From: Octopus bimaculoides
Lineage: Eukaryota
Assembly (NCBI RefSeq): GCF_001194135.2
Contig: NC_068984.1
Location: 55,886,663-55,950,662 of the forward strand
DNA length: 64,000 nt
Reading direction: 5' to 3'
Shown here: positions 5,717 to 51,480 of the stretch, piece after piece
How the letters are laid out: the number at the start of each line of letters is the position of its first letter
Position numbering within the stretch: the stretch's first letter is position 1
Position numbers and translations under genes: made by a program
Notes under the pieces: generated by a model
What the model saw: only the letters and a program-made list of their open reading frames with translations
The model's database searches: none
What the model was told of the DNA's origin: nothing

Positions 5717-6634
5717 GTATGCACGCAGACACATACATATATATGTGTGTGTGTGTTAACTGTCGAAAAAGGGTAGAAAATATGAAACCCACACAGCAAA
5801 TATCCAGAATTCTAACAAATAAACTGTCGTTATACTGTAACACTTTTATTAGCATAAATTTATTGATTTCATTCGGCTGACGCAGTTTTTATTCCTGTAA
5901 GTCGTGTTAACTCGTTTGAATCGAACCAATAAACTACTGTTATTAATTTTATCGACCAGCAATTTTGTGCGAGAAAAAGGACGAAGCAAATACGTTGAAG
6001 CCCCAAGCGCTTATTATTCTATATCGTCAACTTCACTATGACCTACAAGTATTCCGCTTCGAACAATGCGTGTTCAAGTGTTATACTTTTAATAACATTA
6101 ACTAGTTAACGACATCAAAACCATGGTCAAACAGCTTCAACTAACGAAACATATTCCAGTATCATGTTGTAAGGAACCTCGACTATAGAGCAAAACTGAA
6201 GACACGCTCAAAATTTTTAGCATACGAGACGTATAGATATATATATCGGATTAGAAGTCAAAACATTGCGAAAATACGGAATATTCTCGTGTCCTGCTTT
6301 TGAAATTGTAAAATACATGCAAACTAGAATGTTATAATATAAAATATATTAAGATTAATATAAACAGATATAAATTGCAGCATTGATAGGATTGAAAGAT
6401 TTGTTTTCAAATATACATTGAATTGTATAAGACCAAAATTTAATGTAAAATTCTATATCTTTTGAAAATTAATGAATCGGAAGTCAATAACTGGATGAAA
6501 TTGTATTATCTGACGATAGAGAATTAAGTCTCTGGCATATTTTGCAATTTAGGGCCCGCATTTGTCATTTTACTGCTTATTGCCGGCTCAGCCCGGATCG
6601 AACAGAGCTGGGATCAAAAACACTTCAACCATAA

Positions 6635-6765: not shown

Positions 6766-8723
6766 ATGTTTTCTTTTTCCATCTTTCACTAATATAATTT
6801 GTCTCCCCTTCTCCCTCTTCTCTCTCTATATACATTTAATTCTCCATTCGTGTTATTACCTACCTTTATGTACGCATAACACACTGGCAAAATTAGACAG
6901 ATATAAGGAAAGCGTAGAACAATATAATAATAGTTTTACAGTGATGTACTTAACAATAGAATATAGTTTTGATCATTTCAAGAAAGCTTTACAACTTCCA
7001 TAAAATAGAATTATATGGACGATAAAAAAAACGCCTACAAAACATGTTTCTATCTTCCGACATATTGCTGAAGTATTATGTCGGCAAAGCAATATTATAT
7101 GTAGTAAAACACTATTTTGTAGCATAAAATGTATTTGTTCTTGCTCACTTAAAGGAAGAAGGCTTTTATTAGAGAGAAAGAAAGTTAATTTTATTTACAG
7201 TTATGCCAACAAAACAAAAACAAATGTTTAATGAACAAAGAAATATACGAAAAAAGACTCAAATATGGACATTTTAATTTTACAACAAGATTGTTGCAAT
7301 AACTGGATTGTTACCCTAAACTCTTAAAGTGAAGATCTCGACACCAGTTAAAGAGACTTGCTGAATAACTTTAAAATACGAAAATAGAATTTATACAAAA
7401 TGCAATACTCAAAAAACACTTTCAGTTCTCAAAAACACTATTTTTGTATTTCTACTTCAGTAATACAATGAATCCGAAGGCAAAAAGTGATCAGTAGAAA
7501 TTCTGAGTTTTATTCAAATAAAAAAAAGTATAGCATCAAAATCGAATTTTACAACAGAAACCGATGTTTTGCGGTAGAATAGAAAACATCAGTACTGTGA
7601 GGAAAATAGAGGAAACTTTTGAAGAGATAAAAATAGATATTCACTAGCTTCACTAGTATCTCTGCATAAAAATATATTTAACTTGAAGCAATGACTGGAA
7701 AAACCATGTTCAACATATCTTTGATCACAATACCTACATTCCATTTTTATGAGTTACGTTTGGATTATGCTTGTATTATAACGTACGTAATCTTATTAAC
7801 TTGAAACTTATCTCACTCAGGTGTGATAAAACGAATGAAATATCAAATGCTTGTGTTTTCTGCTTAACTTCACAACTTCTTTCAATGCCCACCACTGACT
7901 AGATTGACTTAATTAAAATCGGAAGTTTTGATATGCATGCGTTCCCCCAAAGTCATTAAAGATTGTAAGAGAAATTAAACTATTTCAATCAGTAATCAGA
8001 TCCTGATATCTGAAGTAGTTGCTTTAGTTTGCCATTTACTGTGTCTCCACGTCATGCTACTTGTAATCCAATACATGCAATCAACTGATACTGTTCAAAT
8101 AGAACTTTCTAGAAGATTGTTTTAAGTAGCTACTAACGAAACCTTTGAATCAAGTGATCATATTTCAGTACAACCTCCTATCAACCGATTTTGGTTTCAA
8201 TCTATTACAGAAAATACAAACTTGACACCCAGCCATACAGCATTCAGGTAGGGGCCTTTTAACGCATATCTCAGATTTATTATTGTTGCGGATGGAAATA
8301 AATATTCCATATAAAAATAGAATTGTAGTTGCCCTTATTACACTAAACTTCTTTGTTGAGTATAATTTTAGTTTAGCACACTGGATGAAAATAGAGTTAA
8401 CTAGTGAACTAGAGCACAGTGTATAGGTTAGTTTTCATTTATCTTAAAACACAGAATATGGTTTATATTGTATTTAACATTATTTACAGTAGTTATATAT
8501 AACTTTAGGTTAATAATGATACACTAATGCACTCTTTAAGCAATCTCCACTGCGAAACATTAGTTGAATGTTCTTTAAATTAAAACCCTCANNNNNNNNN
8601 NNNNNNNNNNNNNNNNNNNNNNNNNNNNNNNNNNNNNNNNNNNNNNNNNNNNNNNNNNNNNNNNNNNNNNNNNNNNNNNNNNNNNNNNNNNNNNNNNNNN
8701 NNNNNNNNNNNNNNNNNNNNNNN

Positions 8724-9860: not shown

Positions 9861-10106
9861 TGAATAGCGTCATAAGTACTACCTTTCCTCCTGACTAAGA
9901 GATGAAAATAATTACGAGAGCTCATAACTTTATATTCAATTCAAAAAATTATTCTACACGTGCCCCTTTCGGTTCAAACTACAATTCAAACAGTACAATC
10001 TCTGAACACCACACAGTCACTGCCCAATAAAATAATGCACCATATTCTCTGTTATGTCACCATAACAACTGGTACATATTTTATTGATCTCAAAAGGCAT
10101 AAAAAG

Positions 10107-10206
10107 AAAAGTTAACCTCAGTGGAACTTGAACTCAGAATATAAAAACAGACAAATACTGCTATGCAGTTTGTCCGGTGTGATAACCATTCTGCCAGGTC
10201 GCCGCC
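10107..10206 (-). mobile_element. SINE family D, degenerate 5' part
   Basis: Reverse complement reads GGCGGCGACCTGGCAGAA...TTCTGAGTTCAAGTTCC. Confidence 0.75.
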
Positions 10207-10286
10207 TACGTATAAACATAATAATATCAACAACAACGACAACAACAGAAACAGCAACAACAATAATAGTGAAATTAATGTACATT

Positions 10287-12195: not shown

Positions 12196-12849
12196 TTAAC
12201 TGAAGCTTCTGTCTTATGTTACAGTGATAAAAGACTGCATTGTAAGATACGAATCTAATAGTTCGCTCTATCTGACACTCTTCAATCAATAAAATCTAAT
12301 GTCTTCTTGATGCAGTGCATCACCGATGTAGATATTCCCTTACATACATAATAATCAAGGAACTGGACATGTTTCTTCATATTTTATTACCAGTTTAAAT
12401 CAATAGGGAGATTTTTAATATTAGGTACTGTAAGTACCAGCATTTAGACATTCTCTCACTATGTACATTCTAATAACAAATTGTCGAAGAGTGGTGAATT
12501 AATTGAATCGTTACAGCATCTGAGAAAATGCATTGAAGTACTTACTTATTTCTCTTTATGTTCTAATTTCAAATCCTGTCGGAGTCAACATTACTTTTCC
12601 TTTTCAGCCGATAAAAAAAAGTACCAGTTAAAAACAGTGGTGGATTATCCGACATGTAGGAATGTGATGTGATGGATATTGGTTGCTAATTATAGTAGAT
12701 TAAAGAGGAAATTCCTTCTACCACAATGTTCCAAGATAATATTTATTTGAAACATAAGGGGGACAAGGCCTCTAATTCGGTTGTTTTCTCATATATTTGC
12801 TTTCTTTTTTAGTGGTTACACACCTGCCTCTTACACACCTGCCTCTTTC

Positions 12850-13200
12850 TCTCTGTTTCTCTCTCACTCTCTCTCTCTCTCTCTATGTATGTATGTATGT
12901 ATGTATGTATCTATCTATCTATCTATTTCTGTGGCTATCTGTTTGTCTGTCTATCTATCTATCTACCTATCTATCACACACACACACACACATATACATA
13001 CACACACACACATACACATACATACACACACACACATACACATACACACACATACACACACACACATACACACACACACACACACACACAATTTATCACA
13101 CTTTCATTCTGCTAACTGCAACTTTGCAGAATCTACATATACACACACATACACACTCACACACAAATATACACTCACAAATGCACGCGCGCACACACAT
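12850..13200. repeat. Compound (CT)(TATG)(TCTA)(CA/CATA) microsatellite tract
   Basis: Direct; source of ORFs 12781..13335, 12797..13204 and 12885..13115. Confidence 0.95.
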
Positions 13201-13500: not shown

Positions 13501-14749
13501 ACATTTGTCCTATTCTGCACGACTGTCTTACACAACTGCTACTGATCCGAGTAATCTGTCTATTGTTTTTTTGTTTTTTTTGCCCCATGTTTATGTTTAC
13601 AATGATTTGAAATTATGATAATGAAAGTAGAAGGTGAAAAAATATTACTCGTGCGTTATTTCATATATCCTGTCTGTTAAAAAGTTTGTGTCTCTAGCCA
13701 AGGAGGCAGTAAAAATCTGAAGCGATATGATTGATACGACTTTGCAGATAAAAAAAAAAAGAAATTTTCAAATTTTCTGTAATTCCTTCCACGGTAAGTC
13801 AAGCATCACAGCTAACACAAACAAACTTAAGTAGCAGTAAAGTCCATCTTTACAGTTGACTGAACACAATGATCGAATTTTTCAGATAAATATCTTACTT
13901 TGAATAGTTATATCTGACAGAATCCTTTTCTCTTGGCAGTTGATTAATTGATCGATTAAACTGATGGTCGTCAGTTTAATTTTTGAAGCTTTTTATTCAC
14001 TTCTTTATTTGCTTGTGTACTTGTTTGTTTGTTTATTTATCTATTCTACTTGGTATTTTTTTAAGTCAACGATCAGAAGAGAGTCTTGATTGTTACGTAG
14101 TATAAAGCATTAAATCGGGATTGTACGAAGTTTTCAGTTAATTCGCTTTCTCAGGTTTCTAGAATGAAATATGGAAATGTACATTTGCAATTGACACATA
14201 CATATCTTTATGTTTGTAACTAAAACCTTTGCCCTTCAGTAAATAATATTCGCAATTTTTATCCATAAAGCTACATTTTTTCAACTCTTTCCTTTGCTAT
14301 ATATTCAACTTACTAGAAAGATTTAGTCATAGCTTTCGCCATTTCTCCCATCATACACTTCTCTCAGACTTTTTCTCTGGTTACACTTCCACAGTATATT
14401 TTCTCAACATTTTCTTCTCTAAAGTCATCAAGTAAAAGTGTACGTATGCGAAAGATGTGTAACACAGAATATTAAACAAAGTTATTGTCCCCATTTTCAG
14501 TCCCATATTTATGTATAGAATTTGTTTTTATATATTGATATTTGTATAAATCTCTTTAATGGAGGTTTTCTAAAGGCGTTCTCAATCTAACAGTATTTCG
14601 CATTGCTAGTTTTATTAGCTTTAGTGTCAGAACAACCACTGTAAAATTTGATGTTTGAGCAGAACTATGATCAGTTACATTCCATTCGTGAGTATCGCGT
14701 TTTATATTCAGACAGTGTGCATTCAAGACCAAATTACCGAAAGCATCAT

Positions 14750-21986: not shown

Positions 21987-22198
21987 AAGGCGACGAGCTG
22001 GCGGAATCGTTAGCACGCCGGGCTAAATGCTTAGCGGCATTTCGTCCATCTTTGCGTTCTGAGTTCAAATTCCACCGACTTTACCTTCCATCTTTTCGGG
22101 GTCGATAAAACAAGTACCAGTTGAACACTGGGTTTGATACAATCGACTTACCCACTCTCCCGGAATTGCTGGCCCTGTGCAAAAACTTGAAATCAATA
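21987..22198 (+). mobile_element. SINE family D, full length (short-tail variant)
   Basis: GGCGACGAGCTGGCGGAATCGTTAGCACGCCGGG...TTCTGAGTTCAAATTCC...CTTTTCGGGGTCGATAAAACAAGTACCAG. Confidence 0.95.
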
Positions 22199-28400: not shown

Positions 28401-29038
28401 TTTAAAAAATACATTTAGATTTTTAATGCATTAAGACGACTGTCAGTTTCCAAGCCGTTGTTGTATTGCTTTTCACCGGTCTTCTGCCTGTACAGAACAT
28501 CAAGTCACAAATTTAACAAGTTGGGACACAAATCGTTGACATCATGAAGAAAGATCATGCGTATATGAAATTCGAGAATAATTTACATACTTCCGGGCGC
28601 ACTTACGAATAAAGAAGTTTTTCTCACTTCATTTTGTCAAAACAGTACCATTTAAACAGTTTATTTGTATAAAACAACAATATTTACTTATTTTTGTCAT
28701 TGACATCACGCAAAATTTCAAAATGAAGATGCTAGGTTAATCCTTGTAAATATCTTTAAATTGTGTATACTTAAAATCATAGGTGTTAATGCATAGCTTG
28801 TTACTCTTCTTCTTCTTCTTTGGATTTTTCTCTCGTCATAAACATTGAGTTAAATGTGATACTTTACAGTATTAGACAGTTGTAGAACAGTCAATCTTCT
28901 GGTTATAAAGTCGCTACAAAATTTGATTTGAAAAGTGAAAGTTACGGAGTGTGAGTTTATAGGGCTTTCCTATAAGGTGTTATCCACCCCTGATTGGAAC
29001 TCTCCCGTATGACATGTACGCATGCTCAGTGACTTGCT

Positions 29039-29284
29039 TTAACAGTTGCAATCAGCTGAATGCACATTGCTAGTGACATTTGACATAATTACCCACACTC
29101 TGTGATCAGGATTCTTTTTTTGGTTTGATGTCGGTATCGAAGGGATTACCAGACACCGGACAATACAGTGAGAGCAGCTTTCACTCACGTCGTGGTATTC
29201 GATGCTGTGTACGTGTCTGTCGTGGTAAAATATGCCACTCCTTAACTGTTGCTTTGCTTTCATCCGTAGCACGAGGTAATTATG
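29039..29284 (-). CDS. Transposon accessory protein, continuation ending in the first half of a SWIM finger (truncated)
   Basis: HNYLVLRMKAKQQLRSGIFYHDRHV...CIVRCLVIPS...PDHRVWVIM....VHSADCNC*; resembles the YNYLV...V...V..S....W.......V.SAHC.C pre-SWIM block of YqaJ-type transposon proteins. Confidence 0.7.
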   Translation of the reverse strand, partial: HNYLVLRMKAKQQLRSGIFYHDRHVHSIEYHDVSESCSHCIVRCLVIPSIPTSNQKKNPDHRVWVIMSNVTSNVHSADCNC

Positions 29285-29294
29285 NNNNNNNNNN

Positions 29295-29508
29295 TCCTGT
29301 CTGAAGTATCGTCCGATACTTCAGACTTATCGTCCGATGAATTTACTTTGTTGACATTTTTCATTGACATAATTTTTATTCCTTTCAACCTTTCAGTCAA
29401 GTCCGCCTTTCTTCCAGTAACATACTGTCCATATAATCTTAAATATTTCTTTAACTCAGGCACAGTAAGTACTTCGATAGCTGAATCATCAAGCTGCTTT
29501 ATATCCAT
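29295..29508 (-). CDS. Transposon accessory protein, N-terminal SAP domain (runs into N-gap)
   Basis: ATG at 29508 (ATCATGG); LTVPELKKYLRLYGQYVTGRKADLTERL fits the SAP consensus L.V.ELK..L...G....G.K.DL..RL; 71 open codons up to the gap. Confidence 0.8.
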
Positions 29509-29820
29509 GATAAGACGTAAAACAATAACAATGGCGTGGGTTAGCCTCCGGAAGTTTAATTATCTACATGGAGCGCCGCCTAGCCAAGGGAGATAACCTA
29601 CTTATAGGAAAGCCCTATAGCAGTAAAACGCAGAATGTGAGATATACTTAACTGAAATTCACAAGACGCACCTGTTCCTTTCTGTTTTGATACGCTAAGC
29701 TAATACTCGTCAATGTGGCATATAGTTTATATATAAAACTTTCATTGTTGACGTATAGCCTGTTTTAGACAGAGACACAAACAGACATACAGACAGACGA
29801 ACGGACAGAAAGACAGACAG

Positions 29821-30050
29821 GAGGTGAGCTGGCAGAAACGTTAACACGCAGGGCGAAATGCTTAGCGGTATTTCGTCTGCCGTTACGTTCTGAGTTCAAA
29901 TTCCGCCGAGGTTGATTTTGCCTTTCATCCTTTCGGGGTCGATAAATTAAGTACCAGTTACGCACTGGGGTCGATGTAATCGACTTAACCCCTTTTTATG
30001 TCCTTGTTTGTCCCATCTATGTTTAGCCCCTTGTGGGCAATAAAGAAATA
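29821..30050 (+). mobile_element. SINE family D, full length, near-perfect 14-bp TSD
   Basis: AGAAAGACAGACAG at 29807-29820 vs AGAAAGACACACAG at 30051-30064; inserted in a (GACA)n tract. Confidence 0.96.
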
Positions 30051-31039
30051 AGAAAGACACACAGACAGACAGACAGATAGATAGATAGATAGATAGATAG
30101 ACGTATAAATATATACATACAAGTGTGTATACAGAGTTAAAAAGCATATGTGAAATTCTTTTATCTAGATTAATGACTAATGCATTGAGAGAGGTAAAAC
30201 AATGCAGTGTCTGTATTTACCCATTAATATCTATGCTGCAAACTACCTATCTATATATTTGACCATTGTGTCTAACTCTTTATAATTGTCAGCCCGTCAG
30301 CCTAGTTAGTTGTGCAGTAATATATGTATGTACATACATGTGGCTATATCTATAAATCGATTTATCTATTTGTATAAAGTATGGATACGCAAATGAATTA
30401 TCACAAATATCTATGTATCTACTTTTCTGTTAACCTACTTATCTATCTAGTTGTGTATTTTTCCCTAACACACTTCTTATATCGTTCTATCCCCACCCCC
30501 TATCAATGAACGCATTAATGTATGCGTATACATACAACAACATATACTCATAAATATGCATATATATATATAAGATACACATGTTGTATAACTCTATATA
30601 TCCACATTACAACTGTCAATAATATATACCTAACTGAAAACGTTGCCTTTGCATGAGCAGGAAGAATTAAAACAGCTATCAAAAGGACTTCAGTAATAAT
30701 AATTCGAATTATGTTTCCCCATGTTTTCTCTTTGTCCCTACCTTTCTCTCCCTCCCTAACTCCCGCTCCTTATCTCTCCTTCCATTTCTCCCTTTCTCCT
30801 TCTTTCTCACTCTCTCTCTATCTATCTATCTATCTACCTATTTTCTCATTCCCTTTCAATATCCGATCATATGATACATGTGTGTGCATGTTCGCATAGG
30901 TAAGTATGTTTTACTGCAGACGTTCAACGAATGAAGAAGCAAAAATTTCACGTGTCTTTAATTTAATGAGTAGCATAATATCTCCCGCCAGAATATGCTT
31001 ACAATGCTCAAATACTATAAATCTTCCTTCTTCAATGTC

Positions 31040-32375: not shown

Positions 32376-32607
32376 AAGGCGGCGAGCTGGCAGAAACGTT
32401 AGCACGCCGGGCGAAATGCTTAGCGGTATTTCGTCTGCCGGTACGTTCTGAGTTCAAATTCCGCCGAGGTCGACTTTGCCTTTCATCCTTTCGGGGTCGA
32501 TTAAATAAGTACCAGTTACGCACTGGAGTCGATATAATCGATTTTATCCGTTTGTTTGTCCTTGTTTGTCCCCTCTGTGTGTAGCCCCTTGTGGGCCGTA
32601 GCGAAAT
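32376..32607 (+). mobile_element. SINE family D, full length, young, 20-bp TSD
   Basis: AAGGGAATAGTAATCATTTC at 32342-32361 and 32608-32627; CpGs intact. Confidence 0.97.
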
Positions 32608-41067: not shown

Positions 41068-41262
41068 CTACTCTAGGCACAAGGCCCGAAATTTTGGGGG
41101 AGGGGTCAGTCGATTAGATCGACCTCACTATGCAAATGGTACTTAATTTATCGACCCCGAAAAGATGAAAGGCAAGGACGACCTCGGCGAAATTTGAACT
41201 CAGAACGGAAAGACAGACGAAATACCGCTAAGCATTTCGCCCGGCGTGCTAACGTTTCTGCA
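41068..41262 (-). mobile_element. SINE family D
   Basis: AGTCGATTAGATCGACC...GGTACTTAATTTATCGACCCCGAAAAGATGAAAGGCAA...ATTTGAACTCAGAACG...GCTAACGTTTCTGC. Confidence 0.95.
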
Positions 41263-51293: not shown

Positions 51294-51480
51294 GGCAGCG
51301 AGCTGATAGAGTCGTTAGCACGTTCAAGGTTCAAATTCTAGGTTCAAATTCCGTTGACGTCGAATTTGCCTTTCATCCTTTCTGGGTAGATAAAACAAGT
51401 ACCAGTTGGGCACTGGGGTCATTGTAATCGACTTCCTCCTTCCCTTGAAATTAGTGGCCTTGTGCCAAAATTTGAAATGA
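51294..51480 (+). mobile_element. SINE family D with internal deletion and duplicated B-box
   Basis: GGCAGCGAGCTG..AGAGTCGTTAGCACG, then AGGTTCAAATTC x2, GCCTTTCATCCTTTCTGGGTAGATAAAACAAGTACCAG. Confidence 0.9.

What the first reader, a model, noticed from the sequence alone, without database searches (positions are those of the whole stretch)
28961..29616. Mini DNA transposon carrying a SAP + SWIM accessory gene but no transposase
Seen: perfect 16-bp TIRs (AGGGCTTTCCTATAAG), AT duplicated on both sides within a palindromic TATA, an ATG 108 bp inside the right end, a clear SAP motif, and after a 10-N gap an 81-codon open frame ending at SADCNC*, only about 80 bp from the left TIR. Established: ISL2EU (PIF/Harbinger-related) elements make AT TSDs and carry a second gene for a YqaJ/lambda-exonuclease-type protein. 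SAP domains also occur in KDZ/Zisupton elements, and exonuclease-bearing Kolobok elements exist but use TTAA TSDs. Inference: this is a deletion derivative of a two-gene element that kept the start of the accessory gene and lost the transposase and exonuclease. An autonomous parent with SAP-SWIM-nuclease architecture may be an undescribed cephalopod family.
Basis: partly seen in the sequence, partly recalled or inferred. Interest (0 to 1): 0.75.

Follow-up and report, generated by a model that had tools for sequence, protein, structure and literature searches.

The report
Deleted ISL2EU transposon copy in octopus

Summary
There are perfect 16-nt terminal inverted repeats at 28961-28976 and 29601-29616, AT on both sides inside TATA, an ATG 108 nt inside the right end, and a SAP domain above Pfam's cut-off. 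After the gap there are 81 open codons ending CNC*.

The element is one copy of a multi-copy family in Octopus bimaculoides. Longer copies with the same ends carry a SAP-SWIM-YqaJ gene. Converging on it is a THAP + HTH_Tnp_4 + DDE_Tnp_4 transposase gene. The same two-gene layout and the same terminal core (YTTTCCKATAA), flanked by AT, occur in the clam Mya arenaria; the layout and one such end occur in an abalone. This matches the published definition of ISL2EU.

One internal deletion, with its junction at about 29043, joined codon ~190 of the second gene to the last 83 nt of the transposase-side end. That junction creates the TAA stop. At least 12 octopus gene models share it, so a single deletion derivative was amplified.

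The "gene" is a relic. The SWIM finger lacks its C-x-H half. The two ORF pieces are out of frame for the written 10 N and for the gap lengths that relatives predict (about 84 nt). It is a new member of a known kind and of low interest.

The parts
28959..28960 (.). Left copy of the AT target-site duplication (inside T-AT-A)
   Evidence: Sequence. The register is fixed by aligning the ends with the Mya, L014 and Haliotis elements, where AT directly precedes the homologous terminus.
28961..28976 (+). Terminal inverted repeat, transposase-side end (AGGGCTTTCCTATAAG)
   Evidence: Perfect inverted repeat. Only two occurrences in the window.
28961..29043 (+). The 83 nt kept from the transposase-side end of the parent: the TIR plus the 5' leader of the transposase gene, stopping before its ATG
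   Evidence: 93% identical over 87 nt to O. bimaculoides L015 6194-6280. There a THAP exon starts about 100 nt from the end.
29043..29043 (.). Junction of the internal deletion, with 1 nt of microhomology. On the gene strand it reads ...GATTGCAACTG | TTAAAGCAAGTC...
   Evidence: Left of 29043 the window follows L015 (transposase side). Right of it the window follows L001/L003 (SAP-SWIM exon). At least 12 octopus gene models share the junction.
29039..29041 (-). TAA stop after ...HSADCNC, created by the deletion junction
   Evidence: Parents read on as CNCTAG + intron + (Q)GEACNH.
29042..29284 (-). 81 open codons: the N-terminal part of the SWIM region of the element's second gene, cut after the C-x-C
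   Evidence: 46% identity to Mya ORF2 residues 111-191, E = 5e-28. 89% identity to P0006. No Pfam hit on its own.
29280..29282 (-). Probable real stop (TAA) of the SAP reading frame, if the hidden stretch is like that of sister copies
   Evidence: Sister copies P0016/P0017/P0019, 94-97% identical to the 5' piece, end ...SQIMT*. ACA TAA fits the window's post-gap CATAA. This is an inference, because the gap hides the frame.
29285..29294 (.). Assembly gap (10 N). It probably hides about 84 nt
29295..29508 (-). 5' piece of the reading frame (71 codons from ATG 29508-29506), with the SAP domain at about 29383-29472
   Evidence: SAP PF02037 26.2 bits against a cut-off of 23.9, residues 13-42. Aligns to Mya ORF2 residues 13-58.
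29299..29326 (.). 13-nt perfect palindrome (GTCTGAAGTATCG ga CGATACTTCAGAC). It is a templated inverted duplication specific to the mini family
   Evidence: The ancestral form without it is in L003 and L001.
29548..29555 (-). ACTTCCGG motif in the 5' leader of the SAP gene. It is conserved upstream of both genes in all related families
29601..29616 (-). Terminal inverted repeat, SAP-gene-side end
   Evidence: Homologous to L003 12796-12811 and L001 1-16.
29617..29618 (.). Right copy of the AT target-site duplication

Best explanation
The 656-nt element at 28961-29616 is a non-autonomous, MITE-like internal-deletion derivative of an ISL2EU transposon. ISL2EU belongs to the PHIS / Harbinger-like superfamily. 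The host is almost certainly Octopus bimaculoides.

The autonomous parent is several kilobases long. It has two converging genes, each starting about 100 nt inside one end. One encodes a SAP-SWIM-YqaJ exonuclease protein. The other encodes a THAP + HTH + DDE transposase.

A single deletion joined codon ~190 of the first gene to the last 83 nt of the transposase-side end. This removed the second half of the SWIM finger, the exonuclease domain and the whole transposase. The shortened element was then copied many times, because it still has both ends.

It can move only if a transposase from a complete copy binds its ends, cuts it out and pastes it into a T-AT-A site, duplicating the AT. The remaining reading frame is a relic and not a working gene.

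Shown here: the structure, the homologies, the shared junction, the AT flanks and the multi-copy state. Inferred: mobilisation in trans, the staggered 2-nt cut, and what lies in the gap.
For: - Ends and flanks: perfect 16-nt TIRs, with AT on both sides.
- Multi-copy state: 20 distinct O. bimaculoides proteins match the element's frames at E = 1e-82 to 2e-25.
- Shared deletion: 12 of those models carry the same deletion junction. Ten end in ...CNC*, P0014 reads through the stop, and P0005 has the same transposase-side tail.
- Parent gene: L001 has TIR - SAP exon - intron - the rest of SWIM - YqaJ (PF09588, 72.9 bits).
- Octopus long copy L003: TIR at 12796, SAP and YqaJ exons, and a decayed transposase gene on the opposite strand (DDE_Tnp_4 146.9 bits, HTH_Tnp_4 42.6 bits).
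- Octopus long copy L015: the window's other end, followed by THAP (31.4 bits against a cut-off of 23.9) and HTH/DDE exons.
- Mya arenaria: ten copies of a 6.48-kb element, more than 99.9% identical. Each has a SAP/YqaJ gene; nine also have an annotated gene on the opposite strand, with THAP+HTH+DDE in four, HTH+DDE in four and THAP alone in one (L010 has none annotated). AT is on the left in 10/10, on the right in 9/10, and A or T lies beyond it.
- Haliotis: the same two-gene layout.
- Conserved terminal layout in Octopus, the L014 organism and Mya, and at the transposase-side end of Haliotis: AT | 5 nt | YTTTCCKATAA ... GTTATC ... ACTTCCG.
- Direct homology of the window's pieces to Mya ORF2: E = 5e-28 and 4e-5, colinear.
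- Published definition of ISL2EU: AT target-site duplication, a DDE/HTH/THAP transposase and a YqaJ second ORF (PMC4482050; PMC4122938; PMC9179366).
Against: - No empty site was found, and AT is a palindrome. The flanks alone would also fit TA, TATA or no duplication. The register rests on homology of the ends and on two head-to-head junctions that share a single AT.
- Published ISL2EU TIRs 'usually' start with GG. These start AGGGC (octopus), TGTCC (Mya), AGCAC and TCGAC.
- Only two long octopus copies were seen, and both are decayed. A working transposase source in this genome is not shown.
- The transposase was not placed in a tree with Repbase ISL2EU references.
- The species is inferred from protein hits, not from the window's record.
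Confidence: 0.9

Rival explanations
1. The element carries a working small gene. One version is a SAP-only or SAP plus half-SWIM protein of about 100-180 residues, kept because it regulates transposition, as truncated P-element repressors do. Another version is that the host has recruited it.
For: The SAP frame with its ATG is intact in this copy and in several sister copies: P0016, P0017 and P0019 have 93-100 residues. The 5' leader with the conserved ACTTCCGG motif is retained. Many copies are annotated as proteins.
Against: The gene models differ by many ad hoc 'introns' that skip frameshifts or gaps. The two pieces are out of frame for every plausible gap length. The SWIM finger lacks its C-x-H half. 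The stop codon is an accident of the deletion junction. There are no expression or selection data.
Confidence: 0.06
2. The element belongs to another cut-and-paste group. Candidates are Spy (no duplication), Tc1/mariner (TA duplication with TIR TAGGGC...), a 4-nt TATA-duplicating family, or Kolobok (TTAA) with an exonuclease.
For: The flanking TAT/ATA extends the inverted repeat to 19 nt. TA, TATA or no duplication all fit this one copy. All 5 octopus ends seen have TAT outside AGGG.
Against: The parents encode THAP + HTH_Tnp_4 + DDE_Tnp_4 and a YqaJ gene. That is the ISL2EU content, not the single ORF of Spy nor a mariner or Kolobok transposase. In Mya the base outside AT is A in half of the copies, which rules out a TA register there. 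Two head-to-head junctions have a single AT between two ends. This fits a target-derived AT and does not fit an AT that is part of each end. There is no TTAA at the flanks.
Confidence: 0.03
3. The inverted repeat and the reading frames are a chance feature or an assembly artefact around the gap.
For: There is a 10-N gap in the middle and a 13-nt palindrome next to it.
Against: Both ends and both coding pieces have homologues in colinear order in other loci and other species. The expected number of chance matches to the TIR is 0.25 even with 3 mismatches allowed.
Confidence: 0.01

Closest known systems
ISL2EU transposons (PHIS / Harbinger-like superfamily; Repbase families such as the ISL2EU-n_CGi series of Crassostrea gigas; Han et al. 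2015, PMC4482050)
   Same: AT duplication at an AT-rich target. [quoted passage not shown] Autonomous elements are about 5-6.5 kb. The family is animal-only and already known in molluscs.
   Different: This copy is a 656-nt deletion derivative without either complete gene. Its TIR starts AGGGC rather than the usual GG. The octopus target looks like T|AT|A in 5 of 5 ends, against the published A|AT|T. The papers read here do not mention the SAP and SWIM modules at the N-terminus of the second protein. No open paper links ISL2EU and octopus.
Non-autonomous deletion derivatives and MITEs of PIF/Harbinger (Tourist-like elements)
   Same: A short element with the ends of an autonomous relative and no transposase. 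It was amplified from one deleted copy and is presumably mobilised in trans.
   Different: The duplication is AT rather than the 3-nt TWA. It keeps a long stretch (about 570 nt) of one side, including a coding fragment. Typical MITEs keep little or no coding sequence.
Spy transposons (sister group of ISL2EU; PMC4122938)
   Same: A related DDE_Tnp_4-type transposase, found in invertebrate hosts including oysters, with AT-rich targets.
   Different: Spy has one ORF, no THAP, no YqaJ gene, no target duplication, and inserts at AAA|TTT. None of this applies here.

Membership tests
ISL2EU (PHIS superfamily) | 2-nt target-site duplication, typically AT | tested here: met
   AT lies at 28959-28960 and 29617-29618. 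The homologous termini in Mya have AT on the left in 10/10 and on the right in 9/10 copies. L014 and the Haliotis right end also have AT directly outside. A single AT lies between two abutting ends in L005 and L014. Caveat: AT is palindromic, and no empty site could be found.
ISL2EU (PHIS superfamily) | Autonomous members encode a transposase with DDE (DDE_Tnp_4), HTH and THAP domains | tested here: met
   This gene is absent from the window's copy because of the deletion. It is present in copies with the same ends. In O. bimaculoides L003, DDE_Tnp_4 scores 146.9 bits and HTH_Tnp_4 42.6 bits. In L015, THAP scores 31.4 bits and HTH/DDE exons follow. The Mya 521-aa protein has THAP+HTH+DDE, and Haliotis has the same.
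ISL2EU (PHIS superfamily) | [quoted passage not shown] | tested here: met
   YqaJ PF09588 scores 72.9 bits in L001 and 75.4 bits in O. bimaculoides P0022. The window's two coding pieces align to the N-terminal part of the Mya YqaJ protein (E = 5e-28 and 4e-5).
ISL2EU (PHIS superfamily) | Transposase groups with reference ISL2EU transposases in a phylogeny of the DDE core | not testable with these tools
ISL2EU (PHIS superfamily) | A tendency, not a defining feature: TIRs usually begin with GG, and the target is A|AT|T (PMC4482050) | tested here: not met
   The termini begin AGGGC (octopus), AGCAC (L001, L014), TGTCC (Mya) and TCGAC (Haliotis). The target is T|AT|A in 5/5 octopus ends and W|AT|W in Mya. 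The Mya element has the full canonical gene content and also lacks GG. The paper says 'usually'. So this does not exclude membership.
Non-autonomous (MITE-like) derivative of an autonomous transposon | Shares its ends with coding-competent relatives, lacks a transposase, and is multi-copy with a shared internal deletion | tested here: met
   The ends match L003 and L015. The window has no transposase similarity anywhere. At least 12 gene models share the same junction. The genome-wide copy number was not countable here.
SAP domain (PF02037) | Profile match above the curated cut-off | tested here: met
   26.2 bits against a cut-off of 23.9, residues 13-42 of the 5' piece.
SWIM zinc finger (PF04434) | C-x-C-x(n)-C-x-H signature and a profile match | tested here: not met
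   The window's copy stops after C-N-C and has no Pfam hit. Full-length relatives have C-x-C-xAGxGExC-N-H. Their Pfam scores are below the 19.6-bit cut-off (17.5 and 16.5 bits). UniProt names three of them 'SWIM-type domain-containing'. So the parent most likely has a SWIM finger and this copy has half of one.
Spy | No target duplication, insertion at AAA|TTT, a single ORF without THAP | tested here: not met
   The flanks are T-AT-A, and the parents have two ORFs with THAP.
Kolobok | TTAA target-site duplication | tested here: not met
   The flanks are ...GAGTTTAT and ATAGCAG..., with no TTAA. The parents' transposase is DDE_Tnp_4.

The most novel reading that the evidence does not exclude
The mini family may not be just debris. 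Its intact SAP-only frame of about 100 residues has its own leader and ATG and is present in many copies. It could be expressed and act as a trans-dominant regulator of ISL2EU transposition. It might do so by competing with the full SAP-SWIM-YqaJ protein for DNA or for the transposase. That would give a first handle on the unknown role of the ISL2EU second gene.
Probability: 0.06. Interest if true: 0.5.

Novelty: new member of a known kind. Interest (0 to 1): 0.2.

Why it matters
It matters little on its own. It is a correctly recognised repeat that should be masked or annotated as a DNA/PIF-ISL2EU non-autonomous element. The roughly 20 octopus 'SAP domain-containing protein' gene models in UniProt are transposon relics rather than host genes.

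Three minor points of value follow. First, the family links cephalopod, bivalve and gastropod ISL2EU elements through a conserved terminal layout. Second, it shows that the little-studied second protein of these elements has SAP and SWIM modules in front of the YqaJ exonuclease. Third, the near-identical Mya arenaria copies (more than 99.9%) look recently active. They would be a good source for testing what that second protein does.

Tried and rejected
- Exact-protein look-ups of P0002 and of the window's own 74-residue ORF found nothing on record. The same locus in another assembly, with the gap closed, could therefore not be fetched.
- I searched for a paralogous empty site by joining the two flanks. 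Only a SINE-like repeat about 200 nt downstream matched elsewhere, and nothing spanned the insertion point.
- tblastn of the Mya transposase against the window gave no hit. No partner gene lies within these 64 kb.
- Rfam at gathering thresholds gave no hit in the window.
- Stop-to-stop ORFs of at least 110 codons in the window look low-complexity from the first 60 residues of each, and I did not search them. No host gene context could be named.
- The SAP-side end of the Haliotis copy could not be recognised. Only the transposase-side end and the subterminal ACTTCCGCCGAGTA pair were found.
- Pfam SWIM does not reach its cut-off in any relative tested.
- Literature searches for ISL2EU with octopus found no papers. 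The search for YqaJ with SWIM and transposon listed 4 papers, which I did not open; by title none appears to concern ISL2EU second-gene domains.
- The hAT (8-nt), PIF/Harbinger (3-nt TWA) and piggyBac/Kolobok (TTAA) registers were considered. I rejected them by reading the flanks.

Full report
**1. What is in the sequence**

The window carries a 19-nt perfect inverted repeat, TATAGGGCTTTCCTATAAG, at 28958-28976 and 29601-29619. That 16-mer occurs nowhere else in the 64 kb, even with three mismatches allowed. Shuffled sequence gives 0.25 matches.

The flanks read ...GAGTT-T-AT | AGGGC...GCCCT | AT-A-GCAG....

On the minus strand an ATG lies at 29508-29506, 108 nt inside the right end. It opens 71 codons: MDIKQLDDSAIEVLTVPELKKYLRLYGQYVTGRKADLTERLKG...SDDTSDR. 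These reach the 10-N gap at 29285-29294. Residues 13-42 match the SAP domain (PF02037) at 26.2 bits, above the curated cut-off of 23.9.

After the gap, 81 codons are open (HNYLVLRMKAK...NVHSADCNC). TAA follows at 29041-29039, 78 nt from the left end. This second piece has no Pfam match of its own.

**2. The gap, tested first**

From the ATG to the last base before the gap there are 214 nt. Read literally, the 10 N put base 29284 at codon position 3. Hidden lengths of 81, 84 or 114 nt put it at position 2. The 81-codon frame needs position 1. So the two pieces are not in one frame under the written length or under the lengths that relatives predict.

Relatives show what is missing. Longer proteins carry NKQKLISPLGEVLPD(PNLL..D)LCKLPNFTDNDIY between ...SDR and NYLVLRMKAK.

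Three sister copies (P0016, P0017, P0019) are 94-97% identical to the window's 5' piece. They end ...GEVLPDLKIFVSCRISQIMT*. The codons ACA TAA fit the bases CATAA that follow the gap in the window.

The most likely state is about 84 hidden nt, with the SAP frame ending at TAA 29282-29280 and the 81 codons in another frame. This is an inference, because the bases themselves are unread.

**3. It is one copy of a family**

A protein search with the two pieces gave 20 distinct Octopus bimaculoides proteins (E = 1e-82 to 2e-25) and one from the snail Littorina. The window is therefore almost certainly octopus DNA.

Ten of the octopus models end at the same ...HSADCNC. One reads through a mutated stop into ...SKSLSMRTCHTGEFQSGVDNTL, which is the window's own downstream frame. 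One has the same tail after a further deletion. That makes twelve models sharing one junction, so one deleted element was amplified.

The models differ from each other by short 'introns' that skip frameshifts or assembly gaps. This is what gene predictors do with decayed repeats.

**4. The parent**

*Logan contig L001.* This 1990-nt contig begins exactly at the homologous end (AGCACTTTCCGATAAG...). It carries the SAP exon up to ...DCNCTAG, an intron, and an exon that continues ...GEACNHIGALLHAL... into a YqaJ exonuclease domain (PF09588, 72.9 bits).

*O. bimaculoides locus L003 (chromosome CM046608.1).* An element starts at 12796 with TAT|AGGGCTTTCCGATAAG. It has the SAP exon and the YqaJ part up to 14412. 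On the opposite strand at 15813-14870 lies a frameshifted, stop-ridden transposase gene. Stitched together, it scores 146.9 bits for DDE_Tnp_4 and 42.6 bits for HTH_Tnp_4. A retroelement interrupts this gene.

*O. bimaculoides locus L015 (chromosome CM046603.1).* It holds the window's other end: 93% identity over 87 nt, at 6194-6280. An ORF with a THAP domain follows directly (31.4 bits against a cut-off of 23.9), starting about 100 nt from the end. HTH/DDE exons lie further in.

*The deletion.* The window follows L015 from 28961 to 29043. It follows the SAP-SWIM exon from 29043 onwards. One internal deletion with 1 nt of microhomology produced ...GATTGCAACTG|TTAAAGCAAGTC... on the gene strand. 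The TAA after CNC is a product of that junction.

**5. Which family**

The SAP-SWIM-YqaJ protein (about 565-615 residues) is widespread in bivalves and gastropods. Relatives have SAP and YqaJ above the Pfam cut-offs and a conserved C-x-C-xAGxGExC-N-H motif.

*Mya arenaria.* Ten loci carry a 6.48-kb element whose copies are more than 99.9% identical. In nine of them the 581-residue SAP/YqaJ gene converges on an annotated gene on the opposite strand; L010 has none annotated. Pfam finds THAP + HTH_Tnp_4 + DDE_Tnp_4 in four of those products (three of 521 residues, one of 484). It finds HTH + DDE in four shorter models and THAP alone in one. The ends read AT|TGTCCTTTCCGATAAC...GTTATCGGAAAGGACA|AT. 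AT is on the left in 10/10 copies and on the right in 9/10. The next base outward is always A or T.

*Haliotis.* A Haliotis locus has the same two-gene layout.

*Aligned ends.* Aligning the ends of the octopus, L001, L014, Mya and Haliotis elements shows a common plan. It runs AT, five variable bases, YTTTCCKATAA, GTTATC, and an ACTTCCG motif shortly before each gene's ATG. The SAP-side end of the Haliotis copy could not be recognised. This fixes the register in the window: the element begins at AGGGC and the duplicated target is AT.

*Head-to-head junctions.* Two junctions have a single AT between two ends: Mya L005 and ENA contig L014 at 7169-7224. This fits an AT that comes from the target and not from each end.

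*Published definition.* The literature defines ISL2EU by an AT duplication, a DDE/HTH/THAP transposase and a second ORF with a YqaJ domain. Its autonomous length is about 4.8 kb, and it occurs only in animals, oysters among them (PMC4482050; PMC4122938; PMC9179366). All of this is met.

*Departures from published tendencies.* The TIRs do not start with GG. The octopus target is T|AT|A in five of five ends rather than A|AT|T: both window ends, L003, L015, and the flank read through by model P0005.

**6. How it works**

*Shown.* The element has both ends of an ISL2EU element, lacks a transposase and an exonuclease, sits between two ATs, and belongs to a set of copies that share its deletion.

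*Inferred from the family.* A THAP-DDE transposase made by a complete copy binds the ends and excises the element. It inserts the element at a staggered 2-nt cut in an AT-rich site, and repair duplicates the AT.

*Unknown.* The role of the SAP-SWIM-YqaJ protein is unknown for the whole group (PMC4482050). In Harbinger the second protein brings the transposase to the ends and into the nucleus. By analogy, a DNA-binding SAP/SWIM front and an exonuclease back suggest end binding and end processing. Nothing here tests that.

Both long octopus copies seen are decayed, so present-day mobility in octopus is open.

**7. Rivals**

- A working mini-gene is unlikely. The frames are discontinuous, the zinc finger is halved and the stop is accidental.
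- Other superfamilies are excluded by the parents' gene content and by the flanks.
- Chance or an artefact is excluded by colinear homologues in other loci and species.

**8. Novelty**

This is a new member of a known kind. No open paper links ISL2EU with octopus. None of the papers read mentions the SAP and SWIM modules of the second protein, and a search for YqaJ with SWIM and transposon listed only four papers, which I did not open. Repbase and Dfam could not be consulted.

Noticed in passing
L005 about 14390-14400 (Mya arenaria) and L014 7169-7224 (ENA contig ERZ26168041): Two elements abut head to head with a single AT between their ends (TIR-AT-TIR, a 56-nt near-perfect palindrome in L014). 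The cause may be insertion next to an existing copy at its own flanking AT. It might also reflect a joined-ends intermediate.
   Followed up: partly
window 29548-29555 (minus strand); also L015 about 6277-6290, L003 about 12856-12870, both ends of the Mya, L014 and Haliotis elements: An ACTTCCG(G) motif lies shortly upstream of the ATG of both genes in every family looked at. On the other strand it reads CCGGAAGT, which is ETS-like. It may be a shared promoter element or a subterminal binding site. The mini element keeps it only on the SAP side.
   Followed up: partly
L003 about 12980-13125: A MITE of about 150 nt is inserted in the SAP exon of the long octopus copy. It has 23-nt inverted ends (GGTAATTTTTCAGATTAACACCC) and an 8-nt duplication (TAAGATTA). 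Inside is a palindrome of TTAGGG/CCCTAA telomere-like repeats. It looks hAT-like.
   Followed up: no
window 29817-30000; also 32377-32553, 41102-41261, 21995-22156, 1704-1829, 51336-51434, 10067-10207: A SINE-like repeat of about 170 nt occurs at least seven times in the window and at least ten times in L015. In the window it is preceded by (GACA)n / (GATA)n microsatellites (29771-29830, 30051-30100). There was no Rfam hit.
   Followed up: no
window 29299-29326: A 13-nt perfect palindrome lies next to the gap. It is an inverted templated duplication specific to the mini family and turns DKCTSDR into DKSEVSDDTSDR. It looks like a fold-back repair scar and may have contributed to the assembly gap.
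   Followed up: partly
P0018, P0005 (O. bimaculoides gene models): P0018 fuses unrelated lysine-rich exons to the element's SWIM fragment. This is either exonisation or a prediction artefact. P0005 reads through the terminal repeat into the flank (...GCCCT ATA GT...) and so gives a fifth end with the TAT/ATA context.
   Followed up: no
L004-L013 (Mya arenaria GCA_026914265.1): Ten copies of a 6.48-kb ISL2EU element lie on eight chromosomes. They are more than 99.9% identical; all carry the SAP/YqaJ gene and three carry a 521-residue THAP+HTH+DDE gene model on the opposite strand. This looks like very recent or ongoing transposition in the soft-shell clam.
   Followed up: partly
whole window: There are 17 runs of N (10 to 861 nt, 5129 N in all) and the sequence is about 65% A+T. 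No ORF of 110 codons or more was searched; their first 60 residues look low-complexity. The element lies in repeat-rich non-coding DNA.
   Followed up: partly
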